Shown: in pieces, positions 2,034-35,353 of the stretch
Numbering within the stretch: position 1 is the first letter of the stretch
Layout: every line of letters begins with the position of its first letter
Made by a program: the position numbers and the translations under genes
The notes under the pieces: model-generated
The model's input: the letters and a program-made list of their open reading frames with translations, nothing else
Told to the model about the DNA's origin: nothing
Databases searched by the model: none
Source of the DNA: Octopus bimaculoides
Taxonomy: Eukaryota
Assembly (NCBI RefSeq): GCF_001194135.2
Contig: NC_069002.1
Location: forward strand, 3,877,197-3,913,305
Reading direction: 5' to 3'
DNA: 36,109 nucleotides

Positions 2034-2285
2034 TCATCATCATCATCATCATTGTTTAACGTCCGCTTTCCATGCTGGCATGGGTTGGACGGTTTGACTG
2101 AGGACTGGTGAACCAGAGGCTGCACCAGGCTCAATCTGATCTGGCAAAGTTTCTACATCTGGATGCCCTTCCTAATGCCAACCACTCCGAGAGTGTAGTG
2201 GGTGCTTTTAGATTCCACTGGCACGTGAGCAAGTCCGGCAGCACCGGCAACAACCATGCTCAAATGTTGTTTTTCACCTGCCAGT
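2034..2285 (-). mobile_element. RTE-LINE 3' UTR / RTE-tailed short element with (ATG)n tail
   Basis: (CAT)n followed by GTTTAACGTCCGCTTTCCATGCTGGCATGGGTTGGACGG...GGATGCCCTTCCTAATGCCAACCAC. The same block recurs many times in the window, and related sequence is contiguous with RT-coding sequence at 8900-9925. Confidence 0.8.
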
Positions 2286-2291
2286 AAAGCG

Positions 2292-2832
2292 ATCACTAGG
2301 AATGGTGACGTGATGCTTCCATTCATTTTCCCACAGGCTTCAGACTCAACATGGATGAGGTAGTGCAACCCTGGGTCAAGAGGGTGGCTGCGGGAAGACC
2401 CTATGTCTGGCAACAGGACTCTGCACCATTGCCACACAAGCAGGAGAACCCAGTCATGGCTGTCAGACAACTTCTGTGACCACATCACCCCTAACATCTG
2501 ACCACCTAACTCCCCAGACTGCAACCCCTTAGATTATTATGTGTGAGGCGCAGTTGGACGAAAGACCAACAAAACTCCTTGTAACACCAAAGATAAACTG
2601 GAGGCAAGGATTATGGCAGCATTCACCAACAAGGAGACCATCCAGAAGAGTTGCAGGAGATTCCGAAATCGTCTGGAGGCTGTGGTTGAAGCCAATGACG
2701 ATTTCATTGAATAAATTTACTCTTTAGTATTTCAAGATATTTTTATGTAATTTTGGTAAATATATGTTAAAATGAGATGTCAATGTTATTTTCATTTTTG
2801 CATAATTTAGATGACAGTTTATTCACTGCATC
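2292..2832 (+). mobile_element. Tc1/mariner superfamily, DD37D (maT-type) transposase 3' relic and right end
   Basis: Manual translation: ..GDVMLPFIF..VVQPWVKRVAAGRPYVWQQDSAP/CHTSRRTQSWLSDNFCDHITPNI*PPNSPDCNPLDYYV*GAV..RRFRNRLEAVVEANDDFIE*. There are 37 residues between the 2nd and 3rd catalytic Asp after correcting a +1 frameshift, and two TGG>TGA stops. Confidence 0.88.
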
Positions 2833-3150
2833 CTATATATACATCATACATATATACAATATATACACACACATATATATATACATACACAACTAGATAC
2901 ATGTAAATATATACACACATATATGTACATACACATATTTACATAAATACATGTGTGTGTGTATGTATACATGTTTGTTTATTTGTTTAATGTATGTATG
3001 TATATATATATGTATATGCACATACCCACATAAACAGTCTGTTTCAATAGGAAATTTTATATATACATAGCTCTAACAGTGAATCATACATACATATTAT
3101 ATAAGTTTACAACACACCACACTACAATCGTATCACACACACACACATAC
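2830..3150. repeat. (TA)/(CA)/(TG) low-complexity microsatellite tract
   Basis: Directly visible alternating TA, CA and TG runs. Confidence 0.85.
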
Positions 3151-3230: not shown

Positions 3231-3909
3231 TCAGCTTCGACGTGTCTGGCCTGCAACAGTAGTAGCAGGCTCTTCCATCTTAATGTCATTTTCATCTTCG
3301 TCTTCACATTTCAAGGCTGTTAGTCTTGCTGATTTAGTTCTATGCCGTCCGGGGGTAATGTTCCAAACCTTGTTTGCCTCGGAGATCTTTAAAGGAGAAG
3401 TGAGGTGGATGACATTCTCGGCATTGTCTTGCAGTGAATTTAAGCTTGTCGACTGCAAAGATGTATTCCTTAAACTGTTTGGTGAGTTGTGGCGAATGGG
3501 GGAAGGTGGCGTCATACTAATATTTTGGTCGGAGTGAAATGTGACATTTTTAGACCTGCTGGCAACAAATGGAGTGCTGATAGCACGGTTCAGATAATTC
3601 TGTTCGTCTGAACTGTCTCTGACATCCTGTCTTGATTTTGAAGTATTGCTTGTTGAGCTGTCAGAACTCATTCCAAGAGACTGCCTCTTTTCTCCATTAA
3701 TTTGCTGAAGTCTTTCAATAGATTTTTTCGCAGAATTCAAAATTGCTTTCTTAGATAAGGAAAGGGTTTCTAAATTTCTGCCCAGCTTTTCAGTAGAAAC
3801 AGGAACTTGGTTTGAGTTACGATTGTTATTCACATCATCAAATTCTTGCTCAGGAGAAGGAGATTTTTGAGCGATTTCTTGTTGTTCTTCATTTTCTTCT
3901 TCTTGCTGC

Positions 3910-3967
<58 letters not shown>

Positions 3968-6900
3968 CTTCAAACTTACGTAAATCAAATTCGATTTCAT
4001 CAGCAAGTTGCTTGTTCGTACCAAGAATCTGTTGAATTTCGCTTTTGAAATCTTTAATGAGTTCTCGGAGATACAACATCAGCTCTTTCAACACTGGAGA
4101 CCGTTTAGTTTCTAAGACAAGCTTTAGTGATGTAACAATCGGAACTATATTTTCTATCAAATTTTTCTTCATCACTTTTGAAATAAGATTTTTGTTCATT
4201 TTTGCAATAACAGCAGCTGCCATTTCCTCTTCATCCATGTTACCTTCATTTTGTTTGTTGACAATTAAAGATATTTTGATTTCTTTACTACCAAGGATGG
4301 TTAAAGAATCCTGCAACACTGTAGTTCCGTCTGCATCAAGTTCAATGATTCCATCAACAACGCCTGCAAGGATTTCCTGATTCAGTTTTGCAGATAAGTT
4401 GATTTTATGTTCATCGGTCATGTGTTGGAGCATGAAAGTGTAAAGACGCCACCGCAGTTCAAATTTGGATTTTCCACGTAGATCAAGGCTGTTTTTGGTG
4501 TTTTGATCTTGGGTGAATCTGTTATACATTGGATGTTTCTGGTAACGATTGAAGTAAAAGATGCATTCAATAAAATGATAGAACATGATGTTTGGATTAC
4601 GAACCAACAGACAATGAACAAAGCAAAACTCGGAGAACTTTTGCAGTTCTATTTGTTCGTCTAAGTAAGTTGTGATGAAACGATAAAAGAGTGGACCTTT
4701 CCATTTCAGATAATCTTCTTGGATGAGCATGGTGAGTAATGTCATGGTTTGTTTCCGGATCAAAGGAGAAACGTCATTGAGACATGTTGCTACCTTGGGA
4801 ATATACTGATCGACAAGGGTAGTGTATCGTATGCACAGGTCACACAAAATGAAAACCACATTGTTGCGGATCGCTTCTTCGGATGACGTTTCCAATTCTC
4901 GTACAAGTGCTGCAACACACTTTTTCGCAAGATCTTCATTCTGAAGGCAGAATTTCCCGAGTGTAATGAAAGCATGCCCTCTCACGCGACTGCTTAACTT
5001 GGAACCGGCAAAATGAAGCAAAGTTTCATGATCTTTACTGGACTTTGTTTTAGACAAATTATCCAGACCATTTGTTTGGGAGGCGGCTGATCCTTGGGAA
5101 CATTTCAATACAAAATCCGAAATGCAAGGAGAAGCAATGATGCTCTGGACTACTAACAAAATATGTTTGATGGGATATGCTGGATGAAGTTGACAAACTT
5201 CTCCAAGAGTAAACAAATGACAAATAACTTTTTCTTCATCAACAACAGTGTTTTCTTTTTCAGACAAAATTAATTTGGATAAATATTTATCAGAAGCTTG
5301 CAGAATGTCCTGGCATAACGTTTTCAACTTGTTTTTCTCAAATTTATTGTCTTCAGTTAGTTTCTTGATAGTTGCCATGGTTACAGAAATTAAGTCGATA
5401 GGAGAACAGAACTGCAACAAACGCTTGCTGAGGTCAGCTACAAGTTTTTGCTTCTCTTCAAAAGGCACTGATTCAGCCACATTCAATAAAACTTTCAAAA
5501 CATATTTACAAGTTGATGTACTCTCGTTGCCACTGTCTAATGAACAATTTTCTTCCCAAAACTGAACTACAAAAGAGCAATCGAATTTTACTTTTGCAGT
5601 CGAAAGTTCTGAAAGCATCATCCATGCTGCATTGTTATGTTCAGTACCAATGTGAGTTTTAAGGACATTGATGTGAAACGCTTTGATCAGCTTCAACCTT
5701 GACCACTGGCTAACAGCGCGTTGGAAATATCGCCGAAGACTTTCTTCCTCTTCTCCAGCCATTATTTTTAATAAATTCCATGTTAACTGGTACTGACTTG
5801 ACAGAGACCTATTGTATGTACACAGATTCTGAAGGAGGACTTCTTCAAGGCACTTCATGCATTTTTCTTGTAAAGTACTTTCACAATCCAAAATCAAAGG
5901 TAAAACTCCATTGAGCCAAGCCTTCTGAATGAAATAGCATGTTGGTAAATCAATTAGAAGGGAGCTGAGCGACTGCATAGCTTGCTTCCGAACAGACAAA
6001 GACGGGTCTCGGCATCTTTCTTCCAAAATATTTACACCCATTTGGCAGTCATTCTGCAGCAACCGTACAAGACTTTCAAAAGCCTGAAGAGCTGATTTCC
6101 TCACAAAAACTTTTTCATCTGATGATCTCCTTTTCAACATTGAAAGAACACCATTATTATCAGAAAGATTATTATCAGCAGGACTAAAATCCAAGTTGAC
6201 AAACGGTGTCTGTCCAGTGAGGACAATACCTTGATTAGGGGTATTGTTATTTTCAGAGCCTGAAGGAAGAGTGGTACCATTCATTTCTTTCTCACAAGAA
6301 ATTGGAGTCACATTGTCAGCTTCTACATTTGGAAGACTTTCTAAATTTGAAGGGTTGCTGTCATATTCTTTATTTTGTGGCGTAAACAAACTTTGGCACA
6401 CATTTACAATTTTTTGATTCCTCGACCCTACACACTGGGAAAAGATTACAATTGCTCTTGAACGGACTGATGAAGAATTGTCGGAACAGCGGTCAACAAC
6501 GTAACCAATATAATGTTTATGTTTTAAATATTCTTGTAGATCGACAGGAACATCTTCGATTGACTGTATCTCAGCTTTCGAAAGCAACAACGAAAAAATT
6601 TCAAGAGCTATCATTCGGTTGTTAGTTTTCGAAGTATTTACCAACACACCAAGCCATTTTATCATTTCGGCATAATTGATTTTGTCAAAAGCGTCCATTA
6701 TAGTCAAAATAGATTCCGCCACTTTGCTTCTATAATCTGTTTTGTCTGGAGTTTTAATACATAAATGTTGAATTAAAGTCCTAGCAGACTTCATTGCCGA
6801 ATCTTTGTGCTGACGAAGAATGTCACATACAAATGAAATAGAATTCAGTCGGCATTGAGTGTAGGCAGCAGGAATTGTTTGGGAGAAAACCACTTTGTTG

Positions 6901-7838
6901 TTGATACCAAGCATTAATATGCTGCTCATTAGTTGTTTGTAAACAATGCTGATGATGGCAGACGAGTTACCTTGAAAGCCGGAACATAATTGTTTTAAGG
7001 CAACATACGCCAACTCGACTGGATATTTAGCGGTGGAAGTAGTAAACGAACAGTTAATATGGTTGTCCAAACCTGCGTAGGGACGGATAAGTTCGGCCAT
7101 AACTTGGACGCTTTTGTGAATTGAAGAATCGGATCCACGCAAAGAAAAATTCTGAACAAGTTGAATAAAAGCTTTTAGCGCACTAACCAAGGCTTTCTGT
7201 AGAATGATGTTATCTTGCGGAGAAAGTTCTTCTCCGTCACTTTCTTCGCTTCCATTGTCCCCGTCATCATCATCCATCTCGACCGAAGTATTTCTATTCA
7301 ATCTACGATTTTTCGCGCGGATATTCTTCTGAGAATTCTTTTGTGAGAGTTTACGTTTTCTGTTGGCGCCGGCGCTCGACGTCCACCTACGCAAAACGTC
7401 CAGGCACAAGTTTAATAACATCGGATTAAAAATTTTAAAAGCGCCACTACCAGAAATGGATACGAGTTGGAAATAATTACAAGAAGCCAACAGACCTGCA
7501 TGTCTTTTTGTTGCACCCACTTTGGTTTTGGAAGAAGCAGATTCTATCAAATATGCCAGATAAGCGATGAAATGTTTATAGGAAACATTACTTTCGACTA
7601 GAACCGTCCAAAAACTAACCTCGTTTGTTTCTCTGTTTATCCAGCGATCGAGAGAAGATTGAAGTTTAAGCAGATCTTCGATGTAGAAGTTGTTCTCTTC
7701 TAAATCAATTATCAAGTCTTCCGGAACAGAGTCTAATTCAACAAAATCTTTTTCCCATGCCGACTTTACCCAGCTATCTTCCAGTTGATCAAGAGGCAAA
7801 TCGTTTAGAATCGCGATAATTTGTTCGATGCCCGCCAT
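3231..7838 (-). CDS. NCAPD3: Condensin II complex subunit D3 (CAP-D3), single coding exon, 1535 aa
   Basis: Uninterrupted ORF from ATG 7838 (context ACTATGG) to the stop at 3231. CAP-D3-like N-terminus (..FWTVL..; RKRK basic patch followed by an acidic EMDD tract), HEAT repeats (DEKVFVRKSALQ; RCRDPSLSVRKQAMQSL), Cnd1-type C-terminal block (IRNNVVFILCDLCIRYTTLVDQYIPKVATCLND..LIRKQT..QEDYLKWKG.LF) and C-tail RAISTP..VTF. Confidence 0.96.
3903..3965 (-). repeat. Coding (CAA)18(CAG)2CAA repeat = 21-Gln tract in CAP-D3
   Basis: (TTG)n on the plus strand, in frame within NCAPD3. Confidence 0.95.
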
Positions 7839-7898
7839 AGTTTGAATTTCAGCCTCGTTTTCAGATAACCGAACCGCTCGCTTTCCTTTCCTTTCGAT

Positions 7899-7908
7899 NN
7901 NNNNNNNN
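7899..7908. other. Assembly gap (10 N) between the NCAPD3 5' UTR and a SINE
   Basis: N run; true length unknown. Confidence 0.99.
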
Positions 7909-8060
7909 GTCACGCTGAATATCCCCGAGAACTACGTTAAGGGTACACGTGTCTGTGGAGTGCTCAGCCACTTGCACGGTAATTTCACGAGCAGGCTGTT
8001 CCGTTGATCGGATCAACTGGAACCCTCGATGTCGTAAGCGACGGAGTGCCAACAACAACA
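7909..8060 (+). mobile_element. SINE 3' portion with (AAC)n tail, CpG-rich and apparently young
   Basis: GTCACGCTGAATATCCCCGAGAACTACGTTAAGGGTACACGTGTCTGTGGAGTGCTCAGCC...GACGGAGTGCCAACAACAACA resembles a recurrent octopus short-element consensus (recalled, not searched). Many intact CpGs. Confidence 0.7.
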
Positions 8061-12079: not shown

Positions 12080-12320
12080 TACCTATCTCATATGTATACA
12101 CACACACATGTACATACAGATACATATATAAATATACATACACACACACTGACAGACAGACATACATATATATGCATATATATGCATGTGTGTGTTGTGT
12201 GAGTGTATACACACACATATATACATATAAGCATACATATACATTCACATATATACATAAGTATGTACGTATATATATATATAGATATACACACACACAT
12301 ACATGTATATNNNNNNNNNN

Positions 12321-12553: not shown

Positions 12554-24017
<11,464 letters not shown>

Positions 24018-24529
24018 GGTAAAAACAATTCCAAGATTATTCCATTAATAACTTCCTTCACCAGTAATGAGATCTTATTGGAAGTGGGAAGGACAGGGAC
24101 TGGTTGATTTAGAACATACAGTGGTGGTGAGGAGGACACTGCTGACCGTTTCTTAACAACGACAAGAGATGACAACGGGTGCGTCATATAACCTCTTTTT
24201 TTTTAGAAAGAGCAGTTAAATTTCCTCCGGTGTGTTGGAAAAGGAATGAGAACCAGCACTAGATGTATATAATGTCTGAACTAAAGACTGTCACGGTTAG
24301 AACGTCTTTGATCGTAGATTTCTCTGCTGGATCTGAAGAGATTTCAGGTTAAGCAGCAGCAGCAGTGGTAGTAGTAGTAGTAGAGGTAGTAGTCGTAGTC
24401 GTAGTAATAAACTAAACAACACAATTAGTTTGCTGCGATTGTATTTGCCAGATCTCAAAACAAGAATAGAGTTATAAGTGAGTGTGGTGATGGTGGGAGA
24501 GACAGAAGGAGACAGAAGGAGAGAAAGAG

Positions 24530-24540
24530 AGAGAGAGGGA

Positions 24541-24630
<90 letters not shown>
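24530..24630. repeat. (GA)n microsatellite
   Basis: ~100 nt of near-pure GA. Confidence 0.97.
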
Positions 24631-24634
<4 letters not shown>

Positions 24635-26520: not shown

Positions 26521-26900
26521 TGGTTTCAAATTTTAGCAGAGGGCCAGCTGTTTTTGAGTGGAAGGGGAAGTTGATTGCATCGACCCCAGTCCTCAGCCGG
26601 AACTAACCAACCCTAAGAGGATTTAAAAAGGAAAGGCACAAGGCTATCAATTTGTGAAGGGAGGCAGCAAGTTAATACCATCGGCCCCCCCCCCAGCATT
26701 AAGACTGATACTTTATTTTATGGACCCGGAAAAGATGAACAGCAAATTTGACCTAAGTGGGATTTGAACACTGAACATAAAGAATTTGAAAATAATAATA
26801 ATAATTTCAAATTTTGGCATGAAACAAGTAATTTCAGGGGTGGGGGTAAGTCAATTACATCGACCACAGTATTCAACTGGTATTCATTTTATCAACCCCA
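26520..26900 (-). mobile_element. Cluster of three SINE family B fragments
   Basis: Repeated (T/C)ATCG(A/G)CCCC, ACTTTATTT, GATTTGAAC and TTCAAATTTTGGCA blocks. Confidence 0.7.
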
Positions 26901-27079
26901 AAAGGGTAGCAGCTACACTTTCAGCGCACCCTCCCCCACTACTAACTTGGTCACCTAGATAGCAGAAGCTATCAACTATGTCTAGTTTTTCTCCCTGGAA
27001 TGTGGCAGTTGTTGTTTTCTGTGCATTTACAGTGTTTAGCATGACTGAATGAAATGCAGACAGGATACACTAGCCTAGA

Positions 27080-28519: not shown

Positions 28520-29286
28520 NNNNNNNNNNNNNNNNNNNNNNNNNNNNNNNNNNNNNNNNNNNNNNNNNNNNNNNNNNNNNNNNNNNNNNNNNNNNNNNNN
28601 NNNNNNNNNNNNNNNNNNNNNNNNNNNNNNNNNNNNNNNNNNNNNNNNNNNNNNNNNNNNNNNNNNNNNNNNNNNNNNNNNNNNNNNNNNNNNNNNNNNN
28701 NNNNNNNNNNNNNNNNNNNNNNNNNNNNNNNNNNNNNNNNNNNNNNNNNNNNNNNNNNNNNNNNNNNNNNNNNNNNNNNNNNNNNNNNNNNNNNNNNNNN
28801 NNNNNNNNNNNNNNNNNNNNNNNNNNNNNNNNNNNNNNNNNNNNNNNNNNNNNNNNNNNNNNNNNNNNNNNNNNNNNNNNNNNNNNNNNNNNNNNNNNNN
28901 NNNNNNNNNNNNNNNNNNNNNNNNNNNNNNNNNNNNNNNNNNNNNNNNNNNNNNNNNNNNNNNNNNNNNNNNNNNNNNNNNNNNNNNNNNNNNNNNNNNN
29001 NNNNNNNNNNNNNNNNNNNNNNNNNNNNNNNNNNNNNNNNNNNNNNNNNNNNNNNNNNNNNNNNNNNNNNNNNNNNNNNNNNNNNNNNNNNNNNNNNNNN
29101 NNNNNNNNNNNNNNNNNNNNNNNNNNNNNNNNNNNNNNNNNNNNNNNNNNNNNNNNNNNNNNNNNNNNNNNNNNNNNNNNNNNNNNNNNNNNNNNNNNNN
29201 NNNNNNNNNNNNNNNNNNNNNNNNNNNNNNNNNNNNNNNNNNNNNNNNNNNNNNNNNNNNNNNNNNNNNNNNNNNNNNNNNNNNNN
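28520..29286. other. Assembly gap flanked by (TA)n
   Basis: N run. Confidence 0.99.
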
Positions 29287-30199: not shown

Positions 30200-31022
30200 N
30201 NNNNNNNNNNNNNNNNNNNNNNNNNNNNNNNNNNNNNNNNNNNNNNNNNNNNNNNNNNNNNNNNNNNNNNNNNNNNNNNNNNNNNNNNNNNNNNNNNNNN
30301 NNNNNNNNNNNNNNNNNNNNNNNNNNNNNNNNNNNNNNNNNNNNNNNNNNNNNNNNNNNNNNNNNNNNNNNNNNNNNNNNNNNNNNNNNNNNNNNNNNNN
30401 NNNNNNNNNNNNNNNNNNNNNNNNNNNNNNNNNNNNNNNNNNNNNNNNNNNNNNNNNNNNNNNNNNNNNNNNNNNNNNNNNNNNNNNNNNNNNNNNNNNN
30501 NNNNNNNNNNNNNNNNNNNNNNNNNNNNNNNNNNNNNNNNNNNNNNNNNNNNNNNNNNNNNNNNNNNNNNNNNNNNNNNNNNNNNNNNNNNNNNNNNNNN
30601 NNNNNNNNNNNNNNNNNNNNNNNNNNNNNNNNNNNNNNNNNNNNNNNNNNNNNNNNNNNNNNNNNNNNNNNNNNNNNNNNNNNNNNNNNNNNNNNNNNNN
30701 NNNNNNNNNNNNNNNNNNNNNNNNNNNNNNNNNNNNNNNNNNNNNNNNNNNNNNNNNNNNNNNNNNNNNNNNNNNNNNNNNNNNNNNNNNNNNNNNNNNN
30801 NNNNNNNNNNNNNNNNNNNNNNNNNNNNNNNNNNNNNNNNNNNNNNNNNNNNNNNNNNNNNNNNNNNNNNNNNNNNNNNNNNNNNNNNNNNNNNNNNNNN
30901 NNNNNNNNNNNNNNNNNNNNNNNNNNNNNNNNNNNNNNNNNNNNNNNNNNNNNNNNNNNNNNNNNNNNNNNNNNNNNNNNNNNNNNNNNNNNNNNNNNNN
31001 NNNNNNNNNNNNNNNNNNNNNN
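30200..31022. other. Assembly gap
   Basis: N run, followed by a 30-bp tandem unit ACACACACAAACATATATATATATAAGTGC. Confidence 0.99.
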
Positions 31023-31739: not shown

Positions 31740-31890
31740 GAGGTGTGGTTGTGTGGTAAGAAGCTTGCTTCCCAACCACAAGGTTCCAGGTTCAGTCTCA
31801 CTGCATGGCACCTTGGGCAAGTGTCTTCTGTAGCCTCAAGCTGACTAAAGTCTTGTGATTGGATTTGGTAGATGGAAACTGAAAGAAGCT
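31740..31890 (+). mobile_element. SINE family A (5' half)
   Basis: GGTGTGGTTGTGTGGTAAGAAGCTTGCTTCCCAACCAC..GGCACCTTGGGCAAGTGTCTTCT..GGAAACTGAAAGAAGC. Confidence 0.88.
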
Positions 31891-31924
31891 CATCATATAT
31901 ATCTATATACATAAATGGCAATTT

Positions 31925-34172: not shown

Positions 34173-34299
<127 letters not shown>

Positions 34300-34786: not shown

Positions 34787-35353
34787 NNNNNNNNNNNNNN
34801 NNNNNNNNNNNNNNNNNNNNNNNNNNNNNNNNNNNNNNNNNNNNNNNNNNNNNNNNNNNNNNNNNNNNNNNNNNNNNNNNNNNNNNNNNNNNNNNNNNNN
34901 NNNNNNNNNNNNNNNNNNNNNNNNNNNNNNNNNNNNNNNNNNNNNNNNNNNNNNNNNNNNNNNNNNNNNNNNNNNNNNNNNNNNNNNNNNNNNNNNNNNN
35001 NNNNNNNNNNNNNNNNNNNNNNNNNNNNNNNNNNNNNNNNNNNNNNNNNNNNNNNNNNNNNNNNNNNNNNNNNNNNNNNNNNNNNNNNNNNNNNNNNNNN
35101 NNNNNNNNNNNNNNNNNNNNNNNNNNNNNNNNNNNNNNNNNNNNNNNNNNNNNNNNNNNNNNNNNNNNNNNNNNNNNNNNNNNNNNNNNNNNNNNNNNNN
35201 NNNNNNNNNNNNNNNNNNNNNNNNNNNNNNNNNNNNNNNNNNNNNNNNNNNNNNNNNNNNNNNNNNNNNNNNNNNNNNNNNNNNNNNNNNNNNNNNNNNN
35301 NNNNNNNNNNNNNNNNNNNNNNNNNNNNNNNNNNNNNNNNNNNNNNNNNNNNN
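34787..35353. other. Assembly gap
   Basis: N run. Confidence 0.99.

What the first reader, a model, noticed from the sequence alone, without database searches (positions are those of the whole stretch)
3231..7838. Completely intronless 4.6-kb NCAPD3 beside an intron-rich gene: retrogene or wholesale intron loss
Seen: 1,535 codons with no intron, while the neighbouring kinase has an intron every ~55-180 nt of CDS. Established: vertebrate NCAPD3 is a many-exon gene, and condensin II presence shapes interphase chromosome architecture. Inference: an essential condensin II subunit was replaced by an intact retrocopy, or lost all introns by cDNA recombination. No poly(A) scar or TSD is visible, which suggests an old event.
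Basis: partly seen in the sequence, partly recalled or inferred. Interest (0 to 1): 0.7.

Follow-up and report, generated by a model that had tools for sequence, protein, structure and literature searches.

The report
Intronless condensin II gene in coleoid cephalopods
The octopus gene for the condensin II subunit NCAPD3 is one uninterrupted 4.6-kb coding exon, a state shared by octopuses, argonauts and cuttlefish, whereas snails and clams split the gene into about 30-36 exons, so all introns were most likely removed in one RNA-mediated event before these cephalopods diverged.

Summary
Window 3231-7838 (- strand) is an intact 1,535-codon ORF encoding full-length NCAPD3 (human CAP-D3 structure 9f5w_D, E 2e-245). 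The gene upstream is an inositol-polyphosphate kinase split into at least 8 small exons.

The intronless coding sequence is not peculiar to this genome (record GCA_001194135.2). It is also one exon in Octopus vulgaris, a third octopod, Argonauta hians, the cuttlefish Acanthosepion esculentum and a second decapodiform. Five gastropod and bivalve orthologues span 12-77 kb in about 28-36 or more blocks. At least 22 intron positions are shared between them, from codon ~20 to ~1500.

The gene is under purifying selection (dN/dS 0.12-0.20), and no second copy turned up in any search. So one old event, before the octopod-decapod split, removed every coding intron of an essential gene.

I favour retroposition followed by loss of the parent gene (retrogene replacement). 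In-place replacement by a cDNA is not excluded: neighbouring genes differ even among the outgroups, and no poly(A) tract or target-site duplication survives. Nautilus could not be tested.

This is a clean, apparently unreported example of a known kind of event. Interest is moderate.

The parts
3231..7838 (-). NCAPD3 (condensin II subunit CAP-D3) coding sequence as one exon: 1,535 codons, ATG at 7836-7838, TGA at 3231-3233
3903..3965 (-). Run of 21 glutamine codons (aa 1292-1312) in the poorly conserved C-terminal tail. This region differs in the relatives.
7839..7863 (-). Sequence just upstream of the ATG, conserved from octopods to cuttlefish (ACGAGGC..ATTCAAAcT, followed by ATGGCGGGCAT). On the opposite strand it reads CCCGCC-ATAG-TTTGAA. 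I take it to be a promoter-proximal or 5'UTR element; this is my inference.
   Evidence: alignment of six taxa. Synonymous sites are saturated between the same taxa.
7899..7908 (.). 10-N assembly gap 61 nt upstream of the ATG. The true upstream sequence here is unknown.
2818..2991 (-). Candidate polyadenylation signals downstream of the stop: ATTAAA at 2991, AATAAA at 2983 and 2823. No poly(A) tract follows.
12554..20262 (-). Upstream neighbour in the same orientation: inositol polyphosphate kinase (IP3 3-kinase-like), with at least 8 small coding exons and a stop about 4.7 kb upstream of the NCAPD3 ATG

Best explanation
In the stem lineage of coleoid cephalopods, a full-length spliced NCAPD3 mRNA of about 4.7 kb or more was reverse-transcribed and inserted into the genome. 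The retrocopy was expressed. It either carried promoter-proximal sequence in its very short 5'UTR or landed in a permissive place downstream of the IP3-kinase-like gene. It took over the essential condensin II function, and the ancestral gene of about 35 introns was then lost. This is retrogene replacement, producing an 'orphan retrogene'.

Shown here: the coding sequence is one exon in every coleoid sampled; the outgroups are intron-rich with shared intron positions; the gene is under purifying selection; no second copy was detected.

Inferred: the RNA intermediate, the change of locus and the loss of the parent gene.
For: - The coding range equals 3 x aa + 3 in this genome, O. vulgaris, Argonauta hians and a 418-kb decapodiform contig. 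Genomic contigs of Acanthosepion esculentum and of a third octopod carry uninterrupted ORFs.
- The outgroups are split: Haliotis 1,635 aa over 36.9 kb, Patella 1,512 aa over 50.8 kb, Mactra 1,671 aa over 77 kb in 36 blocks, Bulinus over 19.7 kb, Biomphalaria over more than 12 kb.
- At least 22 intron positions are shared by two or more outgroups, from codon ~17-21 to ~1457. Every one, including the first and the last, is absent here.
- dN/dS is 0.12-0.20, and the frame has stayed intact although synonymous sites are saturated between octopods and decapods.
- Only one NCAPD3 per cephalopod turned up in the searches.
- None of the outgroup neighbours of NCAPD3 (an aminotransferase head-to-head in Haliotis; NAD_binding_10 and a LIS1-like gene in Patella) lies next to the cephalopod gene. 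The cephalopod gene sits in tandem after an IPK gene.
- The neighbouring IPK gene kept its many introns, so intron loss is not a regional or genome-wide habit.
- Precedent exists: the single 3.2-kb coding exon of amphioxus SYCP1 (PMC5803294).
Against: - No poly(A) remnant or target-site duplication is present. This is expected after roughly 250-300 million years (a date from memory), but it leaves no positive retroposition scar.
- A change of locus is not demonstrated. The outgroup neighbours differ among themselves, so the ancestral locus is undefined.
- 10-kb flanks of the decapodiform locus share nothing with the octopod flanks.
- E2F-like GGCGG motifs close to the ATG also occur in Haliotis and Patella. 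That would fit retention of the native promoter just as well.
- The whole genome could not be searched for a relic of the parent gene.
Confidence: 0.5

Rival explanations
1. Wholesale intron loss in place. A full-length cDNA of NCAPD3 recombined with the original gene (gene conversion or double crossover) and erased all introns at the ancestral locus. The native promoter was kept and no second copy ever existed.
For: Intron removal is precise and the frame is intact. The gene kept a conserved, compact region at the ATG, and GGCGG motifs also occur next to the ATG of Haliotis and Patella. There is no retroposition scar. An essential single-copy gene never has to pass through a phase of redundancy followed by loss.
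Against: cDNA-mediated conversion usually removes some introns, often adjacent and biased to the 3' end (general knowledge). Here about 35 introns went, including one only ~20 codons from the ATG, which leaves about 60 nt of homology for the 5' crossover. The head-to-head partner genes seen in Haliotis and Patella are absent here.
Confidence: 0.35
2. Gradual, independent loss of each intron along the long stem branch of coleoids.
For: The stem branch is long, and Nautilus was not sampled.
Against: It requires about 35 separate precise deletions in one gene, while the neighbouring 317-aa kinase keeps 7 or more introns. Gastropods and bivalves kept at least 22 shared positions over a longer time. 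No sampled coleoid retains a single coding intron.
Confidence: 0.07
3. This copy is a retropseudogene or a specialised (for example germline) duplicate, and a spliced paralogue is the working gene.
For: Expression was not examined, and the genome could not be searched as a whole.
Against: The 1,535-codon frame is intact, with orthologous intact copies in six taxa and dN/dS of 0.12-0.20. It covers human CAP-D3 end to end. No other cephalopod NCAPD3 appeared in the exhaustive representative search or the word-indexed searches.
Confidence: 0.03
4. Assembly artefact: cDNA contamination or a mis-joined transcript in the genome assembly.
For: A 10-N gap sits 61 nt upstream of the ATG.
Against: The same single-exon structure, embedded in repeat-rich genomic flanks, is present in independent assemblies: the O. 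vulgaris chromosome, Argonauta, a 418-kb long-read contig and short-read genomic contigs. Window and O. vulgaris are collinear through the gene and both flanks.
Confidence: 0.01

Closest known systems
Retrogene replacement / 'orphan retrogenes' (Krasnov 2005 and Ciomborowska 2013, as cited in PMC5803294; PMC3548309). Example: amphioxus SYCP1.
   Same: One long coding exon (3.2 kb in AmphiSYCP1, 4.6 kb here) stands where orthologues across animals are multi-exonic. No parent copy is found. The state is conserved across a clade, and the gene is an essential chromosome-biology gene.
   Different: For AmphiSYCP1 the new locus (next to the ParaHox cluster) and co-option of a neighbour's bidirectional promoter were shown. 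Here the change of locus is not demonstrated and the promoter is unknown. The event here is probably much older and the mRNA longer.
Reverse-transcriptase-mediated intron loss by recombination with cDNA (the model originally proposed for yeast, later applied to animals and plants; from general knowledge)
   Same: Introns are removed exactly and the coding sequence is undisturbed.
   Different: Typical cases lose one or a few adjacent introns, biased to the 3' end. Here every coding intron (about 35) is gone at once, including the one ~20 codons from the start.
Canonical multi-exon NCAPD3 of vertebrates and other molluscs
   Same: The protein is orthologous over its full length: 9f5w_D at E 2e-245, and 37-41% identity to gastropod and bivalve proteins.
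   Different: Gene structure: one coding exon in 4.6 kb, against about 28-36 or more exons in 12-77 kb.

Membership tests
NCAPD3 / condensin II CAP-D3 protein family | Full-length collinear similarity to an experimentally characterised CAP-D3 | tested here: met
   9f5w_D (human condensin-2 subunit D3), E 2.3e-245, query 15-1447 against chain 16-1438, one stretch
NCAPD3 / condensin II CAP-D3 protein family | Cnd1 C-terminal HEAT domain, and clearly D3 rather than CAP-D2 (condensin I) | tested here: met
   PF12717 at E 9.5e-14. CAP-D2/Ycs4 chains score only E 8e-4, against 2e-245 for D3.
NCAPD3 / condensin II CAP-D3 protein family | NCAPD3-specific Pfam domains (PF26777, PF26778, PF26779) | tested here: inconclusive
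   These are precomputed for orthologues 92-94% identical and for all relatives. They were not returned by the local Pfam scan of the window protein, and none is on record for it.
NCAPD3 / condensin II CAP-D3 protein family | Assembles with SMC2/SMC4, CAP-H2 and CAP-G2 and acts in chromosome condensation | not testable with these tools
   Biochemical property
Retrogene replacement (orphan retrogene) | Single coding exon where orthologues in related lineages are multi-exonic with shared intron positions | tested here: met
Retrogene replacement (orphan retrogene) | No multi-exon parent copy left in the genome | tested here: inconclusive
   No second cephalopod NCAPD3 was found. A whole-genome tblastn was not possible.
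Retrogene replacement (orphan retrogene) | Lies at a locus unrelated to the ancestral one | tested here: inconclusive
   The cephalopod neighbours (IPK, caspase) differ from those of Haliotis and Patella. But those two also differ from each other.
Retrogene replacement (orphan retrogene) | Poly(A) tract and target-site duplications at the insertion | tested here: not met
   No A-run of 8 or more within 1 kb downstream of the stop. Erosion is expected at this age, so absence is weak evidence.
Retrogene replacement (orphan retrogene) | Functional: the frame is maintained under purifying selection | tested here: met
   dN/dS 0.12-0.20. The ORF is intact in six taxa with synonymous sites saturated between the suborders.
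In-place cDNA-mediated intron loss | Same locus and native promoter as the intron-bearing ancestor | tested here: inconclusive
   The synteny comparison is uninformative. GGCGG motifs near the ATG occur in cephalopods, Haliotis and Patella.

The most novel reading that the evidence does not exclude
A single full-length retrocopy of more than 4.6 kb replaced an essential cell-cycle gene in the coleoid ancestor. It could do so because the gene's cell-cycle control element lies within or next to its very short 5'UTR and travelled with the mRNA, making the retrocopy self-sufficient for regulated expression. The candidate element is a CDE/E2F-like CCCGCC, a 4-nt spacer and a CHR-like TTTGAA on the opposite strand, straddling the start codon and conserved from octopus to cuttlefish.
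Probability: 0.15. Interest if true: 0.5.

Novelty: new member of a known kind. Interest (0 to 1): 0.35.

Why it matters
Complete replacement or 'processing' of an essential, long, roughly 35-intron housekeeping gene is rare. This case is clean and deeply conserved, and it has good outgroups. It gives a single rare genomic change shared by Octopodiformes and Decapodiformes, which could be scored in Nautilus and Vampyroteuthis. It also offers a natural experiment on how an intronless copy acquires or keeps cell-cycle-regulated expression.

It does not by itself say anything about condensin II function or about 3D genome architecture in cephalopods. The protein is full length and conserved.

Tried and rejected
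1. Nautilus could not be tested. Three word-indexed protein searches and the exhaustive representative search with cluster look-ups returned no nautiloid sequence. The one unnamed full-length hit (P0118) shows no molluscan affinity.

2. Synteny could not separate retroposition from in-place loss. The outgroup neighbours differ from one another. The decapodiform 10-kb flanks share nothing with the octopod flanks.

4. The first homologue search was swamped by the polyglutamine run and gave only 7 true hits. The query was trimmed for later searches.

I used hand-picked exon ORFs instead.

6. The Pfam scan of the putative mariner remnant found nothing.

7. Rfam found no RNA family in the window.

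8. Literature searches for an earlier report of intronless cephalopod NCAPD3 found none.

9. I had thought the Logan contigs L004-L007 might be transcripts giving evidence of expression. Their ends look genomic, with no poly(A) and with repeats, and ERR12945500 is described as short reads used for coverage analysis. They count as genomic evidence only.
Full report
**What is there**

The window holds one very long ORF on the - strand, 3231-7913. The first ATG is at 7836-7838 and the TGA stop at 3231-3233, giving 1,535 codons. With a stop-codon frequency of 0.05 in this AT-rich sequence, an open frame of that length has a chance probability of about 1e-34.

The product is NCAPD3, the CAP-D3 subunit of condensin II.
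- It aligns in one collinear stretch, residues 15-1447 to residues 16-1438 of human condensin-2 subunit D3 (9f5w_D, E 2.3e-245).
- The condensin I paralogue Ycs4/CAP-D2 reaches only E 8e-4.
- Pfam finds the Cnd1 domain.

A look-up of the exact protein shows the window is part of record CM046622.1 of assembly GCA_001194135.2. There the same 1,535-aa product is called over exactly 4,608 nt.

A 10-N gap lies 61 nt upstream of the ATG and outside the coding sequence. The start is the conserved one: all cephalopod relatives begin MAGI- there, and O. vulgaris has stops just upstream.

**The neighbour**

Upstream and in the same orientation lies an inositol polyphosphate kinase. It matches PF03770 at E 2e-27 on concatenated exons. 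Its motifs resemble IP3 3-kinases, which is my reading. It is annotated as 317 aa.

Its coding exons in the window lie at about 20119-20262, 17507-17590, 16724-16825, 16434-16490, 14277-14324, 12882-13052 (ending in a GT donor) and a last exon ending near 12554.

**Distribution**

The single-exon coding sequence is not a peculiarity of this species. The coding range equals 3 x aa + 3 in each of the following.

| Taxon | Locus | Evidence |
|---|---|---|
| O. vulgaris | L001 | 94% aa identity. The annotated model starts at an internal Met, but the genomic frame is intact from the MAGI start. |
| Argonauta hians | L002 | 70% aa identity |
| Unnamed decapodiform, 418-kb long-read contig | L003 | 58% aa identity |
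| Acanthosepion (Sepia) esculentum | L004-L006 | Uninterrupted ORFs on genomic short-read contigs. Run ERR12945500 is identified in bioRxiv 10.1101/2025.04.22.649952. |
| A third octopod | L007 | Uninterrupted ORF on a genomic contig |

The two decapodiform proteins are 82% identical to each other. Window and O. vulgaris are collinear through the gene and both flanks, which rules out an assembly artefact.

**Outgroups**

| Species | Protein length | Span of coding range | Blocks found |
|---|---|---|---|
| Haliotis asinina | 1,635 aa | 36.9 kb | 32 or more |
| Patella vulgata | 1,512 aa | 50.8 kb | 28 or more |
| Mactra antiquata | 1,671 aa | 77 kb | 36, with near-complete coverage |
| Bulinus truncatus | 1,062 aa | 19.7 kb | 16-22 |
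| Biomphalaria glabrata | 904 aa, partial model | more than 12 kb | about 17 |

I projected the block boundaries onto a protein alignment. At least 22 intron positions are shared by two or more of these species, from about codon 17-21 to about codon 1457 in window numbering. Haliotis and Patella both have a GT donor after codon 21. The ancestral molluscan gene was therefore intron-rich along its whole length, and the coleoid gene has lost every one of those introns.

**Function**

The gene is under purifying selection.
- dN/dS is 0.20 against O. vulgaris (dS 0.14).
- dN/dS is 0.12 against the third octopod (dS 0.33).
- dN/dS is 0.12 between the two decapodiforms.
- Between octopods and decapodiforms synonymous sites are saturated, yet the frame is intact.

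No second cephalopod NCAPD3 appeared in three word-indexed searches or in an exhaustive HMMER search of 1.84 billion representatives. This is evidently the working and only copy, though expression was not examined.

**Mechanism**

About 35 precise intron removals in one gene are best explained by one RNA-mediated event. The neighbouring small kinase keeps its introns, and gastropods and bivalves kept theirs over a longer time. The event happened before the octopod-decapodiform split, roughly 250-300 million years ago (a date from memory).

Two routes fit: retroposition of a full-length mRNA followed by loss of the parent gene (retrogene replacement, as for amphioxus SYCP1, PMC5803294), or replacement of the gene in place by its cDNA.

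I favour retroposition (0.5 against 0.35) for these reasons.
- All introns are gone, including one only ~20 codons from the ATG. That would leave about 60 nt of homology for a 5' crossover.
- The cephalopod gene sits in tandem 4.7 kb behind an unrelated gene. In Haliotis and Patella it sits head-to-head with a partner.

The evidence is not decisive.
- The outgroup neighbours differ from each other: an aminotransferase in Haliotis, NAD_binding_10 and a LIS1-like gene in Patella, and none within 10 kb in Mactra. No ancestral locus can therefore be defined.
- The decapodiform flanks are uninformative.
- No poly(A) tract or target-site duplication remains.

**A possible regulatory clue**

Across all six coleoid sequences, about 25 nt around the start codon are nearly invariant: ACGAGGC..ATTCAAAcTATGGCGGGCAT. 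Synonymous sites elsewhere in the gene are saturated between the same taxa. On the opposite strand the block reads CCCGCC-ATAG-TTTGAA.

This resembles a CDE/E2F element, a 4-nt spacer and a CHR element, as in G2/M promoters. That resemblance is recalled from memory and was not tested. GGCGG-type motifs also lie within ~40 nt of the ATG in Haliotis and Patella. If control elements sit in or beside a very short 5'UTR, a retrocopy could have carried them along. This is speculation.

**Known or new**

The single-exon model is visible in public annotation. I found no paper that notes it. It is a new member of a known kind, retrogene replacement or complete RT-mediated intron loss, and not a new mechanism. 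It says nothing direct about condensin II function or 3D genome architecture in cephalopods.

**Limits**

- Nautilus was not found in any accessible collection, so the event is bracketed only between the coleoid crown and the split of cephalopods from gastropods and bivalves.
- Introns in the UTRs, the transcription start site and expression were not assessed.
- Intron positions were mapped from tblastn block ends, so they are approximate and the counts are minimum counts.

Noticed in passing
window 19135-19661, 28520-29286, 30200-31022, 34787-35353, 12311-12320, 7899-7908: Runs of N (assembly gaps). They cause the very low GC values in the composition profile and the spurious long 'ORFs' listed there.
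   Followed up: yes
L001 9584-10078 (O. vulgaris OX597835.1): The deposited O. vulgaris NCAPD3 model (1,370 aa) starts at an internal Met. The genomic frame is open from the conserved MAGIEQ start about 165 codons upstream, so the annotation appears truncated at the N-terminus.
   Followed up: yes
window 7836-7863 (- strand); same position in L001, L002, L003, L004, L007: A block of ~25 nt straddling the start codon is nearly invariant from octopods to cuttlefish. On the opposite strand it reads CCCGCC-ATAG-TTTGAA, which resembles a CDE/E2F plus CHR cell-cycle promoter module. That resemblance is from memory and untested.
   Followed up: partly
window ~2280-2720 (+ strand): A decayed transposase-like frame with stops and frameshifts ends in ...PPNSPDCNPLDYYV*GAVGRKTNKTP...EANDDFIE. 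It looks like the C-terminus of a mariner/Tc1-type transposase, about 500 bp downstream of the NCAPD3 stop. Pfam gave no hit.
   Followed up: partly
L010 1-9652 and L011 1-9328: In Haliotis and Patella, NCAPD3 has a head-to-head neighbour within ~350-700 bp of its ATG: an aminotransferase (PF00155) and an NAD_binding_10 protein respectively. The partners differ. Both species share an intron after codon 21.
   Followed up: partly
window 15545-16131, 17177-17332, 18497-18617, 31741-31916; also 13353-13565, 22646-23126, 26802-26908: Dispersed short repeats (SINE-like, ~100-200 bp) occur many times in the window and in the O. vulgaris and Argonauta loci. A 217-bp unit is repeated 1.9 times at 23448-23859, and GA microsatellites lie at 24497-24631 and 34179-34299.
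   Followed up: no
window 3903-3965 (aa 1292-1312); P0003 (Argonauta): The C-terminal tail carries a run of 21 glutamines in this species. Argonauta instead has long N/D-rich and G/A-rich low-complexity insertions, which make its protein 1,681 aa. The polyglutamine run swamped the first word-indexed homologue search.
   Followed up: partly
window 14195-14369 (- strand): Two kinase-like ORF pieces (..[16 protein letters not shown].. and ..[16 protein letters not shown]..) lie ~20 nt apart in different frames. This is either a very short intron or a wrong guess about the second piece. The exact exon model of the kinase was not resolved.
   Followed up: no
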